Part shown: in pieces, positions 10,404-57,407 of the stretch
Layout: each line of letters begins with the position of its first letter
Position numbering within the stretch: the stretch's first letter is position 1
Origin: Octopus sinensis
Lineage: Eukaryota
Assembly: GCF_006345805.1 (NCBI RefSeq)
Contig: NW_021836310.1
Span: 9,746-73,745 of the forward strand
Length of the DNA stretch: 64,000 nt
Direction of reading: 5' to 3'
The notes under the pieces: model-generated
The model's database searches: none
What the model was told of the DNA's origin: nothing
Seen by the model: the letters and a program-made list of their open reading frames with translations, nothing else
Made by a program: the position numbers and the translations under genes

Positions 10404-10890
10404 TGCACATTTGCATGCAACACCGCCATAACACCAGAGTCGCTCGTATGTTTTCTGTGTCATGTAGTGCCTGTTACATTGTGATTCTGAGTCCAGCGCA
10501 GCTCAAATAAACTTTATCTTACATCTTTCCGAGATCGATTACATTATAACCAAGCGACAGAATAGGTAACTGGGTGGACGTCACCGACCCCACCCCGGAA
10601 GGTGATGACGTCACAGCATCGCACCGCTCCAATGATCTTTACATGTGGGACGATGGTCTCAAAAGGTTATCGCCACGTCCACTGATTTTTGCTGGTGTGA
10701 GACGATGGCCATTCACAGTTGCGGTGGCCTACACTGAACCTAATATATTGAATTCATCGATTCATACTCAGGTTATCGATCACTGATGAATTAAAGGAAA
10801 TGTTGAAGTGGGCAGGGATTGAACTCAAAATGTTAACGGACGTAATCACTCTATTTCCGACAACAGGTATATAATATATACTATATATTA

Positions 10891-17703: not shown

Positions 17704-18572
17704 CAGGGTGCGATGAACTAACTGTCGTCTCAGTTACCCAAAAATGAAAATAACACTGACATCCCATTTTAACAGATATCTTTACCAAAATTACATAAAA
17801 ATATCTTGAAATACTGAAGAGTAAATTTATTCAATAAAATCGCCATTGCCTTCAATTACGGCCTCCAGTCGACTTCGGAATCTCCTGCAACTCTTGTGCA
17901 CCGTCTCCTTGTTTAAGTTAGTGAATGCTGTCATAATCCTTGCCTTCAGTTCGTTTTTGGAGTTGCAAGGAGTTTTGTTGGTCTCTCGCTCAGCTGCACC
18001 TTACACAAAATAATCAAGGGGGTTGCTGTGTGGGGAGTTAAGTGGCCAGATGTTAGGGGTGATGTGGTCGCAGAAACTGTCTGACAGCCATGACTGGGTT
18101 CTCCTGCTTGTGTGACATGGTATCGTGTCCTGTTGCCAGACATAGGGTCTTTCAGTAGCCACTCTCTTGACCCAGGGCAGCCGTACCTCCTCCAGGCACT
18201 TGATGTAGGCCTCCGTGTTGAGTCTGAGATCGTGTGGGAAGATGAATGGAGGCATAACGTCGCCATCACTTGTGATTACTCCAAACACCATGATGTTGAC
18301 CGGATGTTTGATTTTTATCACTCAAGGTACATGCTCTCAGATAGCAGTCCTGAGATTGACACCCAAACACTGAAATGTTCGTATTGGAGCTTCCGGCGTG
18401 AATGACAAGCAGTACATGTCATTTCCAAATTTCTGACAGTGAATTGTGTCATAGAGTTGTTTTTCTCATAGACAGTGCCAACTGACCCTACTATACTGTG
18501 TAGTTGACAAAATCAAAAACAATGCGCAGAATTAAATATATAAAATGACGACAATTTACCCATTTGCATATG
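17704..18572 (-). mobile_element. Internally deleted Tc1/mariner, DD37D (maT-like)
   Basis: ORF 18001-18321: KHPVNIMVFGVITSDG...WQQD-x37-D(YFV), spacing counted by hand. Left end TA|CAGGGTGCGATG; the right TIR near 18545-18572 is degenerate. Confidence 0.8.
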
Positions 18573-27844: not shown

Positions 27845-28115
27845 AATCATCATCATCATCATCATCATCGTCGTCGTCGACGTCGTCGTTGTTGTTGTTG
27901 TTGTTGTTGTTGTTGTCGGCTTCATTATTTTATTTATTGTTCTGTTTTTGCATCTTTTTGCAGGACGCCCGCCGTGCCAAAACCACCAAAATCCACTGAA
28001 AAGACAAGTAAGCCATTAATTATATCCCTTGCTTTGTCTATTACTATCCTCATTGCTGAGAGACGGAAACGATAACACCGTCTCTCTCTCTCACTCTCTC
28101 TCTCTCTCTCTCTCT

Positions 28116-29060: not shown

Positions 29061-29153
29061 CCAATGATACACAACAAAGCAACGTTCCCGTCGGTCTGAT
29101 AGCAGCTTTGATATTGCTATGCGTCCTGATAGCAGCATTGATATTTCTTTGGG
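29061..29153 (+). CDS. Transmembrane exon of a single-pass type I membrane protein
   Basis: Acceptor cttgttttttcttcattcag, donor G|GTAAGT; 93 nt, phase 1-1. Translates (x)NDTQQSNVPVGLIAALILLCVLIAALIFLW(V), a hydrophobic stretch of about 23 aa that splices onto a basic stop-transfer exon. Confidence 0.85.
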
Positions 29154-30722: not shown

Positions 30723-33768
<3,046 letters not shown>

Positions 33769-34402
33769 TTACTAAGATTGGTGTACAAGAAGTACCTGTG
33801 CAGATGAATAATTTTCAGTGAGTGTAGCTTGCACCGCACTACCCCCACCTATTGGCCCAAGGAGACTTTCGCCGGTGTGACATGAGAATTGACAAAACCG
33901 GGAACCTCCAAGGCCTCAGTTTTTATTTTGGATATTTCCTTCTTTTTGGTAGATTACCAACCAAGGTTAAAGAGCTTCTACCTGCCCATGAGATAGGCTA
34001 GACACCGAAACGCTTCATAGAATCATTAAATATTATTCCGGTATCCGACGCTGAGCAGCACATACATAAATACATTAAAAAGTACAAGATATGTGATTTA
34101 AACATATAAATAGAATAAGATTTAAATATAGATAATATATACATAAAAAGGAAAAATATACACACATATATATATAAGAATATGTACAAAAGAATATATA
34201 CAAATTTTACACATATTTGTTGGATGGCCGTTTGATAGGTCTTATTTTTCGCCCTGCAAGGTGTCCAACAATCACCCTCCTCCCTAAGGAAGCCTGATGG
34301 GGTTGTCAGTCTAGTCGCCGACGACCCGATAGGTTGTACTGGATCACATGTTACCAGTAGCACTCGAGAGCGACCTGACATATATATATATGTGTGTGTG
34401 TA

Positions 34403-34435
<33 letters not shown>

Positions 34436-34438
34436 ATG

Positions 34439-34497
<59 letters not shown>

Positions 34498-34754
34498 TAT
34501 ATATATAATATATATATATATGCATATATGTATTATACTATACGTGCGTGTATATATATCTATGTCTGTAATATATATATAAACTCGAACCTCTTACCAC
34601 ACAGCCACGCCTGCGCCTTTAAAGTATGTATGTACACACACACATACGCTCACACATACACACACACACACACACAGACACTCAGACACACACATATATA
34701 CGCACATACAGATATACACGTAACATATTCACTGCTTAACATTTCTCTTTCTAG

Positions 34755-34817
34755 TGAAATATCGTAAACGAGAGAAAAAGCGGCGCAACCGACGGATCAT
34801 GGCTGAAGCTTCTGAAG
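34755..34817 (+). CDS. Juxtamembrane exon A (basic stop-transfer)
   Basis: Acceptor ttaacatttctctttctag, donor AG|GTGTGT; 63 nt, phase 1-1. Translates (V)KYRKREKKRRNRRIMAEASE, in frame with the TM exon (TGG G + TG AAA). Confidence 0.8.
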
Positions 34818-34894
34818 GTGTGTAACAAACAATGAAACAGAAACATATTCGTTTAGTATTTTAACCCGTTGTTTTATATTTCCAATATTTGCAG

Positions 34895-34963
34895 TAAAAT
34901 ACAGGGAGCACAAAAGGAAGATTCAGGAGCGAGTATTAGAACGAATGATGAGGCGAACTCAAG
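34895..34963 (+). CDS. Juxtamembrane exon B (paralogue of exon A)
   Basis: Acceptor ttttatatttccaatatttgcag, donor AG|GTCAGT; 69 nt, phase 1-1. Translates (V)KYREHKRKIQERVLERMMRRTQ; same VKYR start as exon A. Confidence 0.75.
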
Positions 34964-35407
34964 GTCAGTCTATCATTGTCAAGACTTCCGGTCAGTCAGC
35001 CAATCGCTGGGTTTTATTTTTGCTTGACAGTGGCCATATTGCCTTGCTGCCTTTGATATCTTGAAGCATGCCTTGATATCTCGAAGCATGCCTTGACTCT
35101 TCGCTGCCTTCAATATTTGGGTTTATTGTTCTCTTTCTTTCTCGCATGGCTTTTTAACTTTCTTTTCTTTCAGCATGTCGACTTTTTTTTCTATTATTAT
35201 TACTTCTAATTTTTATTTTTATTATTACTAGAGTGATAAAAGATGGTGAGTTGGTAGAATCGTTACCGAGCCGAGCAAAACTGCATAACGGCACTTCGTC
35301 CAGCTTTACGTTCTGGGCTCAAATTCCGCCGAGGTCGACTTTGCCTTTTATCCTTCGGGGTCGATCAACTAAGTACCCCCACACCACCAACATTGCTGGC
35401 CTTGTGC

Positions 35408-36554: not shown

Positions 36555-37474
36555 CGACATGGTATCGAAATGAACCCGGACTAGTTATGTTTAATAGAAA
36601 ATAACTTATTTACCTAAGTTTTAACATCATCTTCTTCGAAATTGTAACCCTGCGCAGCAATTCACCGGTCCCAGCGCTCCTGCCACTTTGGGAATCCAGT
36701 CTGGAAGTTGTTTTCCATGAGTCGAGGACCTTCTACGATTTGTTTTGGATCTCGACAACTGTGTTAGAACAGCGACTTTTGAGCAACATTTTCCCCTTGG
36801 GGAAGATATGGAAGTCCGCGGGTGCGAAATCTAGGGAATAAAGTGCGGAAGCGATGCCATGTTTTTTTTTTTTTTTTTTTTTTTTGGTGGGAAGCTCGTG
36901 AGTGAGGAGAGCTCGGTGACAGGGTGCATTGCCGTCGCGAAGAGTCCAGTTCTTCCCGCTCCACAGATCCGGTCGCTTTCACCGATGTCCTCCCTCAAAA
37001 GTCGCAGTAGAACTCTGGATTGACAGTCTGACCCCGGAGAAGAAATTCTCGATGCTCAATATCCCATTTTCGGGAGTGACGCTCGTGACAGGTTTTCCAG
37101 ATCGCCCATCGTCTTCCAGAGATGTTCTTCCGCCTTTGAAGAACCCGTGCCACTCGAAACATTGCGTACGACCCATTGCCTCGTCGCTGTAAGCTTACCG
37201 ACGCATGCTCGATGTCTCTGTTGCAGACATCTTAATTTTAACGCAAAATTCCATGTTGGCTCTATGTTCCAACTTCCTGCCCAGGGCAAAAATCGCAGAT
37301 TACAGCATACACGTGATCACAAAAACACAAATTTCACAACTTGCGAACACAGCAATGTCACTTGGCACACTGCCTCATGAAGGTCACTGCTAACTCTCAC
37401 TATGTGTGCAACCGTGTGCTGCCATCTGTTGGCGCGCTACAGAACTAGTCTGGGAACTTTTTGGTATCACTTCG
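36555..37474 (-). mobile_element. Internally deleted mariner element
   Basis: TIRs (TA)CGACATGGTATCGAAATGAACCCGGACTAGTT and (TA)CGAAGTGATACCAAAAAGTTCCCAGACTAGTT; N-terminal HTH remnant MGRTQCFEWH..FKGGRTSLEDDGRSG and a C-terminal DFAPADFHIFP...KWQERW remnant. Confidence 0.8.
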
Positions 37475-45999: not shown

Positions 46000-46780
46000 C
46001 AGCATATACGTGCATGCATACACTCACACATATATAGGTGTATATATTGTATATCAGGCTGAATAAAAAGTAAGCAACGTTTTGAAGCATGAAATTCATC
46101 ACAATATATTCCAACAATGCGGAGATTTTAATCATTAAAGTAAGTGCCATTACAATCAACACATTTTTGCCAACGAGTTACAAGTTTGTTTATTCTGGTA
46201 ACATAAAAATCTGGAACTGTTTGAACGCACTTTCAGCATCGGTTTGATTTTTGAACTCCTCCTCTCACAGGAAACCATCAAGGTGCTTGAAAGTGGTATC
46301 GGTAGGAGAAGGAGGAGAAGGTGTAGGGAATAAAAGCTGGTGGGGGAGAAACTTTGTAGCCAAGTTCCCTCAACTTCTGGAGCGTCATTAGGGAAACGTG
46401 TGGTCAAGCATTGTCATGAAGAATGATTGGTTCTCTTCTGTTGACCAGTCTGGGATGGAGGAGTAGCAGTTTTTTCATTCATTTTGGCAATTTCGTGGCA
46501 ATATGTTTCTGCAGAAATGGTTTTTCCGGGTTATAACAAGTTATAATGGATGAATCCATCAATACACCACCAAACAGTCACCATAACCTTCTTTTTGAAG
46601 AGCTCGGGTTTAGGCAAGGTTTCCGGTGCTTCATTTTGGTCCAACCAGTGTGAATAACGTTTTTTATTATTGTACAGAATCCACTTTTCATCGCAAGTTA
46701 CAATAGAGTCGAGAAATGGATCGGTCTGGTTACGGAGAAGAAGCGATGGGCAAATTTCATATCTGCGCATTTTCTGATTT

Positions 46781-48991
46781 CACTGTGCAACAAATTTCAG
46801 GTTCAAAAAAAGTACAAGTTAAGTAAGACTTGTTTCTAGGTCAAAAAATTGTCCTGATTCTGATTCTGACCTTTATTTCTCCAGATTAGGCACCGTTTTC
46901 CTGTACCATGAACCATATGTTTTATAATATACTGCATAATATTGCGTATTGAATACAACATTGCAAATACTAAAAGTTACAGAAAACAAAACCAAAAATT
47001 TAGTTGCTATAACAAAACATATATCGGCTATGAATTAAAAACACACCTGTCAGTTTTGTCCTTCTAAGCCTCTTGTGCGGAGTGTGATCTGTTTTTTATA
47101 CCCCAGCAGTAGTCTGCCAACATGCCAAGGTTCCATTTTCCTTTGAATCGTTGCTCCATCACTGAAATATCCTGATGGAATCTTTCATCATGTTCATCAC
47201 TCATATCACCAAGATTTTCCCTCAAAAAAATCCAAATGAGAGTGAAGCACATGGACTTTTAGAGACATGTTACATCCCATATCATGATAATGACTTAGCA
47301 GATGATTCACAACTTGCACATAGTCTTTTGAACGATGGTTGCCCAGGAGGTTATCGCAAACTTTCTTGAATGACTCAAAGGCAAGCTTCTCTTTTCTCTT
47401 GAGATGTGTGATGAAGGTTTCATCAAGTAGAATTTTTCGAATTTGGGGACCTATGAAGAAACCTTCTTTAATTTTAGCTTGACTCAGGTAAGGGAACTTT
47501 TCTGCAAGATATGCAAATGCGAAGGATTCTTTGTCCAAGGCTTTCACAAATTGCTTAAACAAACCAAGTTTAATATGCAAAGGTGGTTTTAAAAATTCTA
47601 TCACTTTTCACAAATGGTTTGTGCATGATGTGTTTTCCTTGCTCAATTTCGTCTCGGATCGCCCAATCCTTGTATACATAATGTTCAGCTTTTGCTCTGG
47701 AATTCCATAAGCACAGGAAGCAGGAAAATTTAGAATAGCCAAGCTGAAGGCCAGTAAGCATGGCTACCACCTTAAAATCTGTACAAATATGCCAGGTATG
47801 GTCATCATATCGTATGCTTGTTAGAATTGCTTTCAGATTTTCATATGATTCTTTCATGGTTGTGCTATAAGCTATGCGAACAGAAGGCAGAGTGTTACCA
47901 TTGTGTAGCAGAACAGCTTTGATGCTGTCCTTGGATGCATCTATGAAAAGTCGCCAGTTGGTTTTATCCTATGGTATTTCCAGTTGCTCAAAATGTTCAG
48001 TGATGTCATTACAAAAGCATAAGTCATTCTTCATGGGGAATAATGCCAGCAGATCCTCTGTACGTTTTCTGTACAGTGTTATCTTCACTCCCTTCTCAAG
48101 AAGATTACGTTCTTGAAGCCTTGATGACAGAAACTCACTTTTCTCTTTGGTTAAATAGAGATCCCTGCACAAGTCATTTAGAGCCTCTTGAGAAAATGGT
48201 ATTGGTTTATTCTTGCTTTCTGGATCATTGGGCTCCACACATTCACCACTGGAATGTTCATCAGCACTGCTGGAACTCTGCATTTCTTGATCTGGAGATT
48301 TAGGCACAGGTAAATTTTCTCAGTGCTCTACAGGGCGCATTGCTGATTGCAAATTTGGGTAAACAATGTGTTTCTTTTTCTTTGCTGTAGTACAGCCTGT
48401 AAAGTCATGGTGACAGAAATAGCAATCATTAGAGTGATTTTTCTGCTCACGCCAAATCACTAGCACACCAAACTTCATGTGAACATTTTTTTCCTACATA
48501 TCAGGCACTCAATGTCTTCGCACATGTAAGGCAACACACATGAGGAGCCCATGACTTATCCTGGTCTCCTAGGTAACAATCGAAGTACGCCTTGTAAATT
48601 TTCTTGATATGGCGTGTAATACGGCGCTTTTCTTTAGCAAAAGTCAATTCCCTACAGATATAACAGAATCTCTTTGCATCATTTTTGCACTGTCTTGCAC
48701 TCATTGTTGAAAACAAATAAGATTTGAAAGATAAAAAAATAACATTAAAACACAAGCTTTGAATCACATTGTAGGTGTTACTAAGATTGGTCTCTAGCCC
48801 TGGGTTGAAACCCATTTTACAATGCGGTAGAGAATTTTATTTAATAATAATGACAAAAAGAATATGCAGTGACAATTCTGTAGAAGCCATGCCTAATTCA
48901 ACAAAAAGAAGGCCAGAAATGGATTTCCCATGTCATTTTGCATATAAAAATAGCCACAGATCTCTTGTACTTTTTTGAGTGTTGCACAGTG
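46781..48991 (-). mobile_element. Chapaev3-like (CMC superfamily) DNA transposon
   Basis: CAC...GTG termini; 12-bp TIR CACTGTGCAACA plus a shared subterminal TCAAAAAAGTACAAG; 3-bp TSD TTT; 2211 bp. The superfamily call rests on my recall of termini, TSD length and protein motifs. Confidence 0.8.
47064..48704 (-). pseudogene. Frameshifted Chapaev-type DDE transposase
   Basis: Fragments MSARQCKNDAKRFCYIC...LGDQDKSWAPHVCCLTC, WRLFIDAS, HICTDFKV, CFLCLW (C2C), PPLHIKLGLFKQFVKAL (LH), KVHVLHSHLDFF (H..H), SDEHDERFHQD...LADYCW, spread over at least five frames. Confidence 0.85.
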
Positions 48992-50598
48992 TTTTCATTC
49001 AAATCGTGTGATACCCATTTGTCGAGATTTTTTGATTTTCCGATCGCATGTAAATGGTTGCAGGCAGTTTTCTGGCTAATTTGAAGTTCTTTTGCCAGTT
49101 CTCGAGTGGTTTTACGTGGATCTTTCTCAATGACGGTCTTTAATTGACTGTCATCGATGACAGATGGGCGTCCACTACGCTCACGATCTTCAAGGCTCAG
49201 GGCTCCACTGCGAAATCATTTAAGCCATTTTCTAGCTGACCACTCACTGGTCATCTCCTCACTAAATGTTTCGTTGATATCGCGAGCAGTTTCAGCTGCT
49301 TTACGTCCTATTTTTGAAGTCGAATAGCAAAATTGCTCGAATATCGCATTTTGACAGTTCCATTTCAGATGATTGTAACAAGTCTTTGTCTATATTATCA
49401 GACAATTTCTTAAAAATGTTTTTAAAAATTCAAAACTCTGCAAAAATCTGGTACAAATTCTTCATGGTTCAAAACCTTGCTTACTTTTTACTCACCATGA
49501 TATATATATATATATATATGCATATGATTGATTGATTCTAGTTTCAGCTCATGAGCTGTGGCCATGCTGGGGCACCACATATAAATAAATATGTATATTA
49601 TATATAAAATATATTATACATGTTATATATATTTAAATATATGTATGTGTGTGTGAGTGTGGAGGTGTGTATAAACATGTGTGTGTGACTATGTTTGTGA
49701 GCGAATATGTGTGCGTATATATTTTCTTACATTTTCGTTCTTTGGTTTGCTTTAGCCATCGCACTTAATGCCATGCTGGAGCACTCACGTATGTTCTTAA
49801 CATGCAAACATAAAGGCATCTGCAACATTCAGTATATTAATATATTTTAAATATTCATAGTCATGGGGCAGAGTGAAACCTTGGGGAGAAAAATTTAGCT
49901 GCTGGTGTCAAAGATATCTTTCAATTAATAAAAGTCAATGTTAAAGGGAGTATGAGAGGAAATCCTGGTGATTCCGAATGCGACAAAGTCGGAATCTATA
50001 TTCTCTTTGATATATAAGTAGTTATGCAACGATTTGGAAAAAGACTAAACCAAGATCCACACTGCAACACACAAATCCTATAGATATATATTGATTTAAA
50101 ATTTTGGGACAAGACCAGACGTTTCAGAGGAAAGGCTAAGTCGAATGCATCAACCCCAGTGTTTAACTGGTACTTATTTTATCGGCCTCAGAATGTAAAG
50201 ACGGACGAAATGCCAGTAAGCAACTTTCCCGGCGTGCTAACGATTCTGCCAGAATATATTGATTTAAAAATTTTCTGGCAAGGCCAGCAATTTCAGACGA
50301 GGGGTTAAGTCGATCACATCAGTCCCAGTGTTCAGCTGGTACTTATTTTATCGACCCCCGAAAGGAAAATAAAAATCCAAATTGCACGGTACATATGTTT
50401 CTTAGCTAGATAAAGCTCTAGATGTAACTGTTATGCAAATGAGTTATGCCCAACTTAGCGAATCATCATGGATGAAACGAAGGTTACATTGTCACTCGGA
50501 ATTCCTAAATCAACTCCACTTGCGTTGAGTTTAACTACACACACACACACACGCACGTATATATATACGTGTATATGTATACGTATATATATATATAT

Positions 50599-56350: not shown

Positions 56351-57407
56351 CAGGGTGGAGCAGAGAGGAAGGACGTTTTAGAAAATTTCACAAGATCATT
56401 AATTTTAGTTGCAAACAAATTTCATTGACATTAATGTATTCGTATTGAATTAGCATTTGTCAAAATCGAGTGTGGAAAACAACTTCCATCATGTGGTGTC
56501 CGTTTTCATTGAGGCATTTCCGAAGGTGTTCTTAAAAGTTGGCCTCCGCTCTCTCTAGCAATGCTCTGTCGATTTGGGCGACTACTTCCACGCGAATAGC
56601 GTCCTTCAAATCGTCCAATATACGGGGCTTATGCGCATATACACGTACCTTGAGGTTTCCCCCACAAATACAAATGACGGCAGTTTTTCCAACAGCACAC
56701 CAGACCCCTTACTTTGGGGTTGTGCAGTGGTGTTTCGTGCATTTCTCTTGGATTTTCAAGTGCCCATTAATGATAGTTCCCCATGCCATTGAGATGAAAT
56801 TGAGCTACATCACTCATTAGCAAAATGCAATTGTCATTTGCCTCAAAAATTGCTTCCATCTGATGTGCGAAGTTGAGCCGCTGTGCATAGTTCCGTGGTT
56901 TCAACTGTTGCCCAATGACCAATTTGTACGGGTGGAAATGCAGGTCTTCATGCAAAATACGCCTTACCGATTGATTACCGATGCCAAGTTCAGTGGAATG
57001 CCTCCGAGCAGAGTGATTAGGACTTCGTATCAAAGCTTGTCTCACGTGTTTCACATTTTCCGGGGTCCGTTCTGTTCGTGGCGCACCCACTGGTCTCCTA
57101 TTCATTGGTATACTTCGTATAAGAAGTGCATTCACCCAATGTAAGAATGTCTTTCGGGTGGGAACAGACGGATTTCGGTGAATGTTGAAGTGACGCCGAA
57201 ATTCAACCTGAACTGTTATGACAGACTCATTATTCTTTACGTAAATGTCGTAGGCAAACACGCGATGCCCTATCGTCCACAGCGCCTGAAAAGAAACAAA
57301 AATGCTCAGACACCACGGACCAAATGGTACCTGTTGGAGATATGTCCCTTCTCCTGGGGCTGAATAATAGCCATTTCAAAAACGTCTGTCCTCTCTGTCC
57401 CACCCTG
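56351..57407 (-). mobile_element. Internally deleted Tc1/mariner-superfamily element (DUF4817-type N-terminus)
   Basis: TIR CAGGGTGGAGCAGAGAGGAAGGACGTTTT vs CAGGGTGGGACAGAGAGGACAGACGTTTT; TA flanks. ORF 56767-57261 has LHFHPYKL and MSDVAQFHLNG; the region with the 2nd and 3rd catalytic Asp is deleted. Confidence 0.85.

What the first reader, a model, noticed from the sequence alone, without database searches (positions are those of the whole stretch)
34755..34963. Tandem-duplicated juxtamembrane exons with geometry predicting mutually exclusive splicing
Exons A (VKYRKREKKRRNRRIMAEASE) and B (VKYREHKRKIQERVLERMMRRTQ) both begin VKYR, each works as the stop-transfer after the TM helix, and both are phase 1-1. 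The 77-nt intron between them has its best branch point (TTTTAAC, A at 34864) only 47 nt from the A donor, within the range where steric interference is known to enforce mutual exclusion (e.g. alpha-tropomyosin). This predicts two receptor isoforms with different membrane-proximal basic segments, which could alter sorting, lipid or calmodulin binding, or dimerisation.
Basis: partly seen in the sequence, partly recalled or inferred. Interest (0 to 1): 0.75.

Follow-up and report, generated by a model that had tools for sequence, protein, structure and literature searches.

The report
Paired alternative juxtamembrane exons, unproven
Two small look-alike coding exons sit 77 bases apart just after the membrane-spanning exon of an unidentified animal membrane-protein gene. 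They are probably real and may be used one at a time, but nothing available here can show how they are actually spliced.

Summary
The described anatomy is in the sequence. Exon A is 34755-34817 (63 nt). The intron is 34818-34894 (77 nt). Exon B is 34895-34963 (69 nt). Both exons are phase 1-1 and both begin VKYR. The best branch-site match, TTTTAAC, has its A at 34864, the 47th intron base. A transmembrane exon (29061-29153) ends in phase 1, and I found a further in-phase "stalk" exon (27964-28007). This arrangement is far above chance: block shuffles average 0.45 such candidate exons per strand and never an adjacent pair. Homology of A and B is modest (protein p=0.003) and their intron flanks are no more alike than unrelated acceptors.

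Mutual exclusion is plausible but untested:
- 47 nt is below the ~50-nt vertebrate limit, but that limit differs between species.
- A second branch-site candidate lies at intron base 59.
- Both exons are multiples of 3, so joint inclusion stays in frame.
- No U12 sites, frame-shift safeguard or competing RNA structure was found.
- A dense GCAUG cluster downstream of B and weak acceptors hint at regulated use.

No homologue, transcript or orthologous locus could be retrieved. The gene family and the "receptor" label are unsupported. It is an ordinary kind of feature and a testable lead.

The parts
27964..28007 (+). Candidate extracellular 'stalk' exon (44 nt, phase 2 to 1). It encodes TPAVPKPPKSTEKT, and its last base A joins CC of the next exon to give Thr.
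   Evidence: Read: acceptor tttttgcAG|, donor CAA|GTAAGC. Site scores 8.7 and 4.0. Its end phase matches the start phase of the transmembrane exon.
29061..29153 (+). Transmembrane exon (93 nt, phase 1-1): NDTQQSN, which contains the N-x-T sequon NDT, then a 23-residue hydrophobic helix VPVGLIAALILLCVLIAALIFLW. It ends with G|GTAAGT.
   Evidence: Acceptor at the 99.6th and donor at the 99.8th percentile.
34380..34716 (+). (UG)n ... (UA)n ... (CA)n microsatellite block that can fold into a long hairpin ending about 38 nt before the exon A acceptor. Whether it takes part in splicing is unknown.
   Evidence: Inverted repeats. Fold of -130.7 kcal/mol, z = -5.3, with 0 of 100 shuffles as stable.
34735..34740 (+). 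CTTAAC, the likely branch site for the exon A acceptor (A at 34739, 15 nt before the end of the intron).
   Evidence: Read. Aligned with B's TTTTAT.
34755..34817 (+). Exon A, 63 nt, phase 1-1: (V)KYRKREKKRRNRRIMAEASE.
34818..34894 (+). Intervening intron, 77 nt, GT-AG. If retained, a stop follows after two codons (…EASEGV*).
34859..34865 (+). Best branch-site match, TTTTAAC. Branch A at 34864 is intron base 47, 30 nt before the end of the intron.
   Evidence: 5 of 7 matches to TACTAAC, fits yUnAy, top score.
34871..34877 (+). Second branch-site candidate, GTTTTAT. Branch A at 34876 is intron base 59, 18 nt before the end of the intron.
   Evidence: the only other yUnAy match. It aligns with exon A's own CTTAAC.
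34895..34963 (+). Exon B, 69 nt, phase 1-1: (V)KYREHKRKIQERVLERMMRRTQ.
34964..34996 (+). Two in-frame donors with the same core: AAG|GTCAGTC at 34964 and CCG|GTCAGTC at 34991. The second would extend exon B by 27 nt (GQSIIVKTS).
   Evidence: the 34895-34990 form is also open in phase 1-1, donor score 3.6.
35066..35177 (+). Cluster of four GCATG (the GCAUG core of Rbfox-type sites) 100-210 nt downstream of exon B. Two of them lie in a 20-nt tandem repeat at 35053-35092.
   Evidence: the densest cluster in the window, and 0 of 500 block shuffles reach 4 in 120 nt.

Best explanation
A and B are two real coding exons of a single-pass membrane-protein gene on the + strand, with the N terminus outside and the C terminus inside the cell. 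They probably came from an old duplication of about 140 bp. Each encodes a strongly basic segment that starts with the same four residues (VKYR) and follows directly on the transmembrane helix.

The most likely usage is one exon per transcript. The donor of the transmembrane exon pairs with either the A or the B acceptor. The A donor is then a poor partner for the B acceptor, because only about 47 nt separate it from the best branch site. The choice is probably tuned by regulators: both acceptors are weak, and a GCAUG cluster lies downstream of B. The result would be two isoforms with different membrane-proximal segments. A is almost purely basic and then acidic. B is helix-prone and amphipathic.

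Shown: the anatomy, the phases, the distances and the excess over chance. Inferred: that both exons are expressed, that they are duplicates, that they exclude each other, and any functional consequence.
For: - The stalk exon, transmembrane exon, A and B form a phase-compatible chain with GT-AG sites.
- Candidate exons of this kind are rare: 6 on the + strand, 0 on the - strand, 0.45 per shuffle, and no adjacent pair in 300 shuffles.
- VKYR is encoded as GTG AAA TAT CGT in A and GTA AAA TAC AGG in B. That is four nucleotide differences, all silent, while the rest of the exons have diverged. This fits selection on both peptides at the same position after the helix.
- Protein global alignment gives p=0.003. 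The exon-start pattern occurs only at these two sites.
- The best branch site is 47 nt from the A donor. That is under the ~50-52 nt minimum reported for human spliceosomes (PMC6692369, PMC7969005) and under the <50 bp criterion used for human mutually exclusive exons (MXEs) (PMC5740500).
- The acceptors of A and B are weaker (about the 96th percentile) than those of the flanking exons (99.6th or higher). The same was reported for mutually exclusive exons in C. elegans (PMC4165533).
- The densest GCATG cluster in the window lies just downstream of B.
Against: - There is no transcript, homologue or orthologous locus.
- Both exons are 3n, so joint inclusion or joint skipping stays in frame and no frame-shift safeguard applies.
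- A second branch-site candidate lies at intron base 59, above the vertebrate limit.
- The limit itself differs between species (PMC4165533, PMC4040987) and is unknown for this organism.
- Many similar neighbouring exons are not mutually exclusive: 6,541 human candidates gave 1,399 validated (PMC5740500).
- The intron flanks show no trace of duplication, and the local protein alignment gives only p=0.06.
- No downstream exon was identified, so the A-to-next and B-to-next junctions are hypothetical.
Confidence: 0.4

Rival explanations
1. A and B are ordinary consecutive exons that are both included. The 77-nt intron is simply a short, efficiently spliced intron, and the protein has one 44-residue basic juxtamembrane region with an internal repeat.
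For: - Both exons are 3n and the joint product is in frame.
- A second branch-site candidate at intron base 59 is above the vertebrate limit.
- Short introns of 32-60 bp are spliced routinely in several invertebrates (PMC4040987, PMC4165533).
- A human construct with an 80-nt intron and 56 nt from donor to branch site still splices (PMC6692369).
- Many similar neighbouring exons are not mutually exclusive (PMC5740500).
Against: - The best branch site is at 47 nt.
- VKYR is kept at the start of both exons, which is most easily explained if each one abuts the helix.
- Both acceptors are weak, and a GCATG cluster lies nearby.
- A median intron of about 2.5 kb in octopus annotations (PMC10700109) makes a 77-nt intron atypical, if the organism is an octopus.
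Confidence: 0.25
2. Only one of the two is a working exon, or each is an independent cassette exon. The other is a decaying duplicate or a rarely used cryptic exon.
For: - The similarity is concentrated in four residues, and the rest has diverged.
- The acceptors are only moderate and both start with T at +1.
- Skipping either or both keeps the frame.
- No protein containing either exon is in a 5.8-billion-protein collection. This is weak evidence, since no relative of this genome is in it at all.
Against: - Both copies keep an open frame, GT-AG sites with donors at the 99th percentile or higher, and silent-only differences in VKYR.
- A dead copy would be expected to pick up stops or lose its sites over the time needed for about 50% nucleotide divergence.
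Confidence: 0.2
3. Neither is an exon. They are chance open stretches between AG and GT in purine-rich intronic or intergenic DNA.
For: - There is no external support of any kind.
- The splice matrix is generic and the thresholds were set after the fact.
- At least one other candidate, 35174-35245, looks like a chance product of T-rich DNA.
Against: - No adjacent pair appears in 300 shuffles, and there are no candidates on the - strand.
- The pair is phase-matched to a convincing transmembrane exon and stalk exon.
- The start pattern occurs twice against 0.34 expected, and the two sites are 140 nt apart.
Confidence: 0.12

Closest known systems
Alpha-tropomyosin exons 2/3 (Smith and Nadal-Ginard 1989, as cited in PMC6692369 and PMC7969005)
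   Same: A pair of alternative exons whose joining would be blocked because the branch site of the downstream exon lies too close to the donor of the upstream exon. Own knowledge for tropomyosin: about 42 nt.
   Different: In tropomyosin the branch site is unusually far (over 100 nt) from its acceptor, behind a long pyrimidine tract. Here the branch site sits at a normal 30 nt and the intron is simply short. The distance of 47 nt is closer to the limit. Nothing has been mapped experimentally here.
OGDH exons 4a/4b with distant branch points (PMC7969005)
   Same: Mutually exclusive pair enforced by branch points 25-41 nt from the donor (46 nt in one fish), judged against a threshold of about 50 nt. 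The intron size is constrained.
   Different: OGDH uses a cluster of distant branch points with a very long pyrimidine tract. Here there is one conventional site plus one alternative above the threshold. The OGDH case is backed by lariat mapping and minigenes.
C. elegans mutually exclusive clusters with too-short introns, for example egl-15 (FGF receptor) 5A/5B and let-2 9/10 (PMC4165533)
   Same: Invertebrate homologous exon pairs, several of length 3n, where the short intervening intron itself prevents joint inclusion. One of them is in a receptor gene.
   Different: Those introns are 14-40 nt, below the worm's minimal intron of about 40 nt. A 77-nt intron would be freely spliced in the worm. 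This shows that the limit must be measured in the species concerned.
Drosophila Dscam exon 17.1/17.2 (Yue et al. 2013; seen only as a reference in PMC7969005, and the paper itself is not held)
   Same: From own knowledge: alternative exons encoding the transmembrane and juxtamembrane segment of a single-pass receptor, which alter sorting. Steric hindrance plus RNA structure has been proposed.
   Different: Dscam swaps the helix itself. Here the helix is constant and only the cytoplasmic membrane-proximal segment would be swapped. No supporting RNA structure was found here.
Predicted mutually exclusive exons by the WebScipio / human MXE atlas criteria (PMC5740500)
   Same: Neighbouring exons, same reading frame, length difference within 60 nt, GT-AG sites and sequence similarity. 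A and B meet all the sequence-based criteria.
   Different: The atlas required RNA-seq validation, and only about a fifth of the candidates passed. That step is missing here.

Membership tests
Mutually exclusive exon pair (sequence criteria of PMC5740500) | Neighbouring internal exons with GT-AG sites | tested here: met
Mutually exclusive exon pair (sequence criteria of PMC5740500) | Same reading frame or phase, and similar length (difference within 60 nt) | tested here: met
   Both are phase 1-1, at 63 and 69 nt
Mutually exclusive exon pair (sequence criteria of PMC5740500) | Sequence similarity of the encoded peptides | tested here: inconclusive
   Global alignment p=0.003, local p=0.06, DNA p=0.03. 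The similarity rests mainly on VKYR. The intron flanks are not alike.
Mutually exclusive exon pair (sequence criteria of PMC5740500) | Transcripts carry exactly one of the two; A-B junctions and double skipping are absent or rare | not testable with these tools
   No transcript data. Protein and DNA collections gave nothing.
Steric-hindrance mutually exclusive splicing (alpha-tropomyosin type) | Donor-to-branch-site distance below the minimum for spliceosome assembly | tested here: inconclusive
   The best site is at 47 nt, below the ~50-52 nt of vertebrates (PMC6692369, PMC7969005). A second candidate lies at 59 nt, and the minimum for this organism is unknown (PMC4165533, PMC4040987).
Steric-hindrance mutually exclusive splicing (alpha-tropomyosin type) | Branch point mapped experimentally and no usable alternative | not testable with these tools
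   Needs lariat sequencing or primer extension
Steric-hindrance mutually exclusive splicing (alpha-tropomyosin type) | Distant branch point separated from its acceptor by a long pyrimidine tract | tested here: not met
   The branch A is 30 nt from the acceptor, and the tract is ordinary at 71% pyrimidine. The geometry is of the 'short intron' type, not the 'distant branch point' type.
U2/U12 spliceosome incompatibility | One flanking intron with U12-type donor (A/GTATCCTT) and branch site | tested here: not met
   The donors are GTAAGT, GTGTGT and GTCAGT
Mutual exclusion backed by nonsense-mediated decay | [quoted passage not shown] | tested here: not met
   63 and 69 nt
Docking-site / selector RNA structure (Dscam exon 6 type) | Competing complementary sequences next to each alternative exon | tested here: inconclusive
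   The 321-nt region folds no better than shuffles (z = -0.43). Only a 14-nt, 79% inverted repeat was found, 34758-34771 with 34849-34862. Long-range partners were not searched exhaustively.
Single-pass type I membrane protein | One hydrophobic helix of about 20 residues, with net positive charge on the cytoplasmic side | tested here: met
   A 23-residue helix followed by segments rich in K and R. An NDT sequon and a Pro/Thr/Ser/Lys-rich stalk lie on the other side. Pfam gives only sub-threshold generic membrane hits.
Single-pass type I membrane protein | Signal peptide and ectodomain; a receptor-type cytoplasmic domain | tested here: not met
   None was found in the window: Pfam on + strand open frames from about 10 to 50 kb and a kinase/phosphatase motif scan of the whole window. 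+ strand frames outside 10-50 kb were only inspected by eye. Such exons may lie outside the 64 kb.

The most novel reading that the evidence does not exclude
A cephalopod-type single-pass membrane protein switches its membrane-proximal cytoplasmic segment through a strictly mutually exclusive exon pair. The exclusion is enforced purely by a minimal-length intron (donor to branch site 47 nt). Exon B is switched on in particular tissues through the GCAUG cluster downstream. The two isoforms differ in lipid, calmodulin or sorting interactions.
Probability: 0.3. Interest if true: 0.45.

Novelty: new member of a known kind. Interest (0 to 1): 0.3.

Why it matters
If confirmed, this would be a clean invertebrate example of exon choice set by intron geometry in a membrane protein. 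It would also give a practical way to measure the minimal donor-to-branch distance in an animal whose introns are otherwise very long. It would add a splicing-based source of protein diversity in a lineage mostly discussed for RNA editing. As it stands it is a well-formed prediction in a gene of unknown family. Its main value is as a target for junction counting in existing RNA-seq data.

Tried and rejected
- Protein search with the spliced transmembrane+A+B peptide: 3 word candidates, none scored.
It was not used further.
- Exact look-ups of three window open reading frames, including two next to exon A: not on record.
- Last protein search with 13 open frames from 28-39 kb, aimed at reaching the same locus in a related genome: 6,067 word candidates, none scored.
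- Degenerate DNA patterns for exon A and exon B in metagenome contigs: no match.
- Pfam on + strand open frames from about 10 to 50 kb: nothing. Pfam on the spliced peptides: only generic sub-threshold membrane hits.
- Kinase and phosphatase motif scan: nothing credible.
- Rfam and tRNA scans of the window: nothing.
- Search for a third VKYR exon copy: none.
- Test for duplication traces in the intron flanks: negative.
- Fold of the A-intron-B region: not different from shuffles.
- Downstream exon: several phase-1 acceptor candidates (40128, 53660, 55773) were listed, but none could be validated.
- The candidate exon at 35174-35245 was rejected as probable chance (T-rich, hydrophobic).
- The ENA contig reached through the transposon protein shares only the transposon (82% nt), not the locus.
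- Literature searches for the cephalopod minimal intron size and for cephalopod mutually exclusive exons gave nothing usable.

Full report
**The observation**

The window is AT-rich eukaryotic DNA (GC 0.29-0.44 in 2-kb windows), full of microsatellites and short interspersed repeats. I did not establish the organism.

At the given coordinates the sequence reads as described:
- Exon A is 34755-34817 (63 nt). It lies between ttctctttctAG| and AAG|GTGTGT.
- A 77-nt GT-AG intron follows at 34818-34894.
- Exon B is 34895-34963 (69 nt). It lies between atatttgcAG| and AAG|GTCAGT.
- With one G carried in, A encodes VKYRKREKKRRNRRIMAEASE and B encodes VKYREHKRKIQERVLERMMRRTQ. Both are phase 1-1.
- TTTTAAC lies at 34859-34865. 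Its branch A at 34864 is intron base 47 and lies 30 nt before the end of the intron. It is the best branch-site match in the intron.

**The gene around it**

It is 93 nt and phase 1-1. It encodes NDTQQSN followed by the 23-residue helix VPVGLIAALILLCVLIAALIFLW, and it ends G|GTAAGT.

I found one more exon that fits. It lies at 27964-28007 (44 nt) and has a very strong acceptor and a GTAAGC donor. It encodes a Pro/Thr/Ser/Lys-rich stalk, TPAVPKPPKSTEKT, and ends in phase 1, exactly as the transmembrane exon requires.

The stalk, an N-x-T sequon, the helix and then a K/R-rich stretch give the topology of a single-pass protein with the N terminus outside.

No ectodomain, signal peptide or cytoplasmic domain could be found in the window:
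- Pfam on + strand open frames from about 10 to 50 kb gave nothing.
- No kinase or phosphatase motifs were found.
- The spliced peptides gave only sub-threshold, generic membrane hits.

"Receptor" is therefore a guess. The downstream partner exon of A and B is also unknown. Several phase-1 acceptor candidates exist, but none could be validated.

**Is it more than chance?**

I scored sites with a generic splice-site matrix.

| Exon | Acceptor percentile | Donor percentile |
|---|---|---|
| Transmembrane | 99.6 | 99.8 |
| A | 95.9 | 99.5 |
| B | 95.5 | 99.2 |

Percentiles are among all AG or GT dinucleotides of both strands.

- With thresholds at the A/B level, only six phase 1-1, 3n candidates of 45-150 nt exist on the + strand and none on the - strand. 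The transmembrane exon, A and B are three of the six, and A/B is the only adjacent pair.
- In 300 block shuffles the mean is 0.45 candidates, and no shuffle has an adjacent pair.
- The start pattern AG-T-N-AAR-TAY-MG occurs exactly twice in the window, at A and at B, against 0.34 expected.

The thresholds were set after the fact and the matrix is not trained on this organism. The excess is nevertheless large. I take A and B to be real exons with a probability of roughly 0.75.

**Are they duplicates?**

- Composition-preserving shuffles give p=0.003 for the in-register global protein alignment. The local alignment gives p=0.06 and DNA gives p=0.03.
- The signal is mostly VKYR. It is encoded GTG AAA TAT CGT in A and GTA AAA TAC AGG in B, which is four differences, all silent. 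This is what purifying selection on both copies would leave. The sample is four codons.
- The 40 nt before each acceptor are no more alike than A's flank is to 285 unrelated acceptors.

If this is a duplication, with a unit of 140 nt, it is old. Convergence of two basic stop-transfer segments is not excluded.

**The splicing geometry**

Three sources put the vertebrate minimum between donor and branch site at about 50 nt:
- PMC6692369 derives about 52 nt from the structure of the B complex. A construct with 56 nt still splices, and a 70-nt intron is severely impaired.
- PMC5740500 uses <50 bp, which is met by 9% of human clusters.

By that yardstick 47 nt is just under the limit. Four points weaken the inference.
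1. The limit differs between species. In C. elegans only introns under about 40 nt are unspliceable (PMC4165533). Intron-length modes of 32 and 58 bp occur in a flatworm, and the optima for minimal intron length are said to vary between species (PMC4040987). I found no figure for cephalopods, only a median intron of about 2.5 kb in octopus annotations (PMC10700109).
2. A second yUnAy site (GTTTTAT, A at 34876) lies 59 nt from the donor and 18 nt from the acceptor. It aligns with exon A's own CTTAAC.
3. Both exons are 3n, so joint inclusion and double skipping stay in frame.
4. Similar neighbouring exons are often not mutually exclusive (PMC5740500).

**Other mechanisms**

- There are no U12-type donors.
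- No frame-shift safeguard is possible, since both exons are 3n.
- The A-intron-B region folds no better than shuffles (z = -0.43).
- One 14-nt imperfect inverted repeat links the start of exon A to the sequence just before TTTTAAC. I treat it as chance.

**Hints of regulation**

- The acceptors of A and B are weaker than those of the flanking exons. The same was reported for mutually exclusive exons in C. elegans (PMC4165533).
- Four GCATG lie on the + strand within 112 nt, 100-210 nt downstream of B. This is the densest cluster in the window, and none of 500 shuffles reaches it. Two of the four sit in a 20-nt tandem repeat, and none has the preferred 5' U. From general knowledge, GCAUG clusters downstream of an exon are typical of Rbfox-enhanced alternative exons. 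Here this is a lead, not a result.
- Just upstream of A, (UG)n and (CA)n tracts can form a very stable hairpin (-130.7 kcal/mol, z = -5.3). Its relevance is unknown.

**External evidence**

None could be obtained.
- The spliced peptide has no relative among 5.8 billion proteins.
- A query of 13 open frames from the locus also found nothing. No close relative of this genome is therefore in that collection, which makes the first negative result uninformative about expression.
- Exact look-ups failed.
- Metagenome scans with degenerate exon patterns failed.

**Surroundings**

The - strand carries only transposon remains:
- Pfam-supported mariner remains: a Mos1-like transposase fragment at 46534-46779, with matching HTH domains at 48901-49389, and a DUF4817/HTH fragment at 56770-57375.
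- Fragments at 18004-18321 and 36736-37316 look like Tc1/mariner transposase on inspection, but Pfam gave nothing credible for them.
- A 1.8-kb element at 47067-48836 sits inside the 46.5-49.4 kb mariner copy. Its roughly 600-residue protein has no Pfam match, but it has 1,059 homologues across animals.

No cellular gene overlaps A and B on the other strand.

**Verdict**

| Reading | Probability |
|---|---|
| Mutually exclusive use | about 0.4 |
| Constitutive joint inclusion | about 0.25 |
| One dead or rarely used copy, or independent cassettes | about 0.2 |
| Not exons | about 0.12 |

The anatomy is that of a candidate mutually exclusive pair of the "short intervening intron" kind. It is closest to the C. 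elegans short-intron clusters and, in its effect on the protein, to Dscam exon 17. It is not of the distant-branch-point kind seen in alpha-tropomyosin and OGDH.

This is a known kind of feature in a gene of unknown family, and one RNA-seq junction count would settle it.

Noticed in passing
window 35066-35177 (+): Four GCATG motifs within 112 nt, 100-210 nt downstream of exon B. This is the densest cluster in the window, and 0 of 500 shuffles reach it. Two of them lie in a 20-nt tandem repeat at 35053-35092. It may be an Rbfox-type splicing enhancer cluster.
   Followed up: partly
window 34380-34716 (+): (UG)n, (UA)n and (CA)n microsatellites are arranged so that the RNA can fold into a long hairpin (-130.7 kcal/mol, z = -5.3). 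It ends about 38 nt before the exon A acceptor. It could affect use of the acceptor or act as a double-stranded RNA substrate.
   Followed up: partly
window 34964-34996 (+): The donor core GGTCAGTC occurs twice, 27 nt apart and in frame. The second donor (34991) would lengthen exon B by nine residues (GQSIIVKTS).
   Followed up: no
window 35174-35245 (+): A third phase 1-1 candidate exon (72 nt) with strong splice sites lies 210 nt after B. It encodes a hydrophobic run (ACRLFFLLLLLLIFIFIITRVIKD) in T-rich DNA. It is probably chance, but it would add a second membrane segment if used.
   Followed up: partly
window 27964-28007 (+): A 44-nt exon candidate with a very strong acceptor encodes a Pro/Thr/Ser/Lys-rich stalk and is phase-matched to the transmembrane exon. 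The finding did not mention it.
   Followed up: yes
window 46534-49389 (-): A Mos1-like mariner copy is interrupted by a roughly 1.8-kb element at 47067-48836. The frameshifted protein of about 600 residues has no Pfam domain but has 1,059 homologues (E<1e-10) in many animals, including a mantis shrimp and a frog. It is 82% identical in DNA to a contig of ENA assembly ERZ25067576 (L001).
   Followed up: partly
window 18004-18321, 36736-37316, 56770-57375 (-): Further degraded transposon-like fragments lie in the presumed introns. Only 56770-57375 has a Pfam match (DUF4817 HTH). The other two look like Tc1/mariner transposase on inspection, but Pfam gave nothing credible for them.
   Followed up: partly
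window 10550-10783 (+): A GC-rich island (50-56% GC), open in all three frames, contains a perfect TGACGTCA palindrome (10606-10613) and a second ACGTCA nearby. It may be a promoter or regulatory element. No gene was assigned to it.
   Followed up: no
window 31024-31373 and 32497-32871 (+): A near-identical segment is repeated with a period of about 1.47 kb inside the 5.6-kb intron between the transmembrane exon and exon A. This is a local tandem duplication.
   Followed up: no
window 34758-34771 and 34849-34862 (+): A 14-nt, 79% complementary inverted repeat pairs the start of exon A with the sequence just before the TTTTAAC branch site. It is not part of the minimum-energy fold and is probably chance.
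   Followed up: partly
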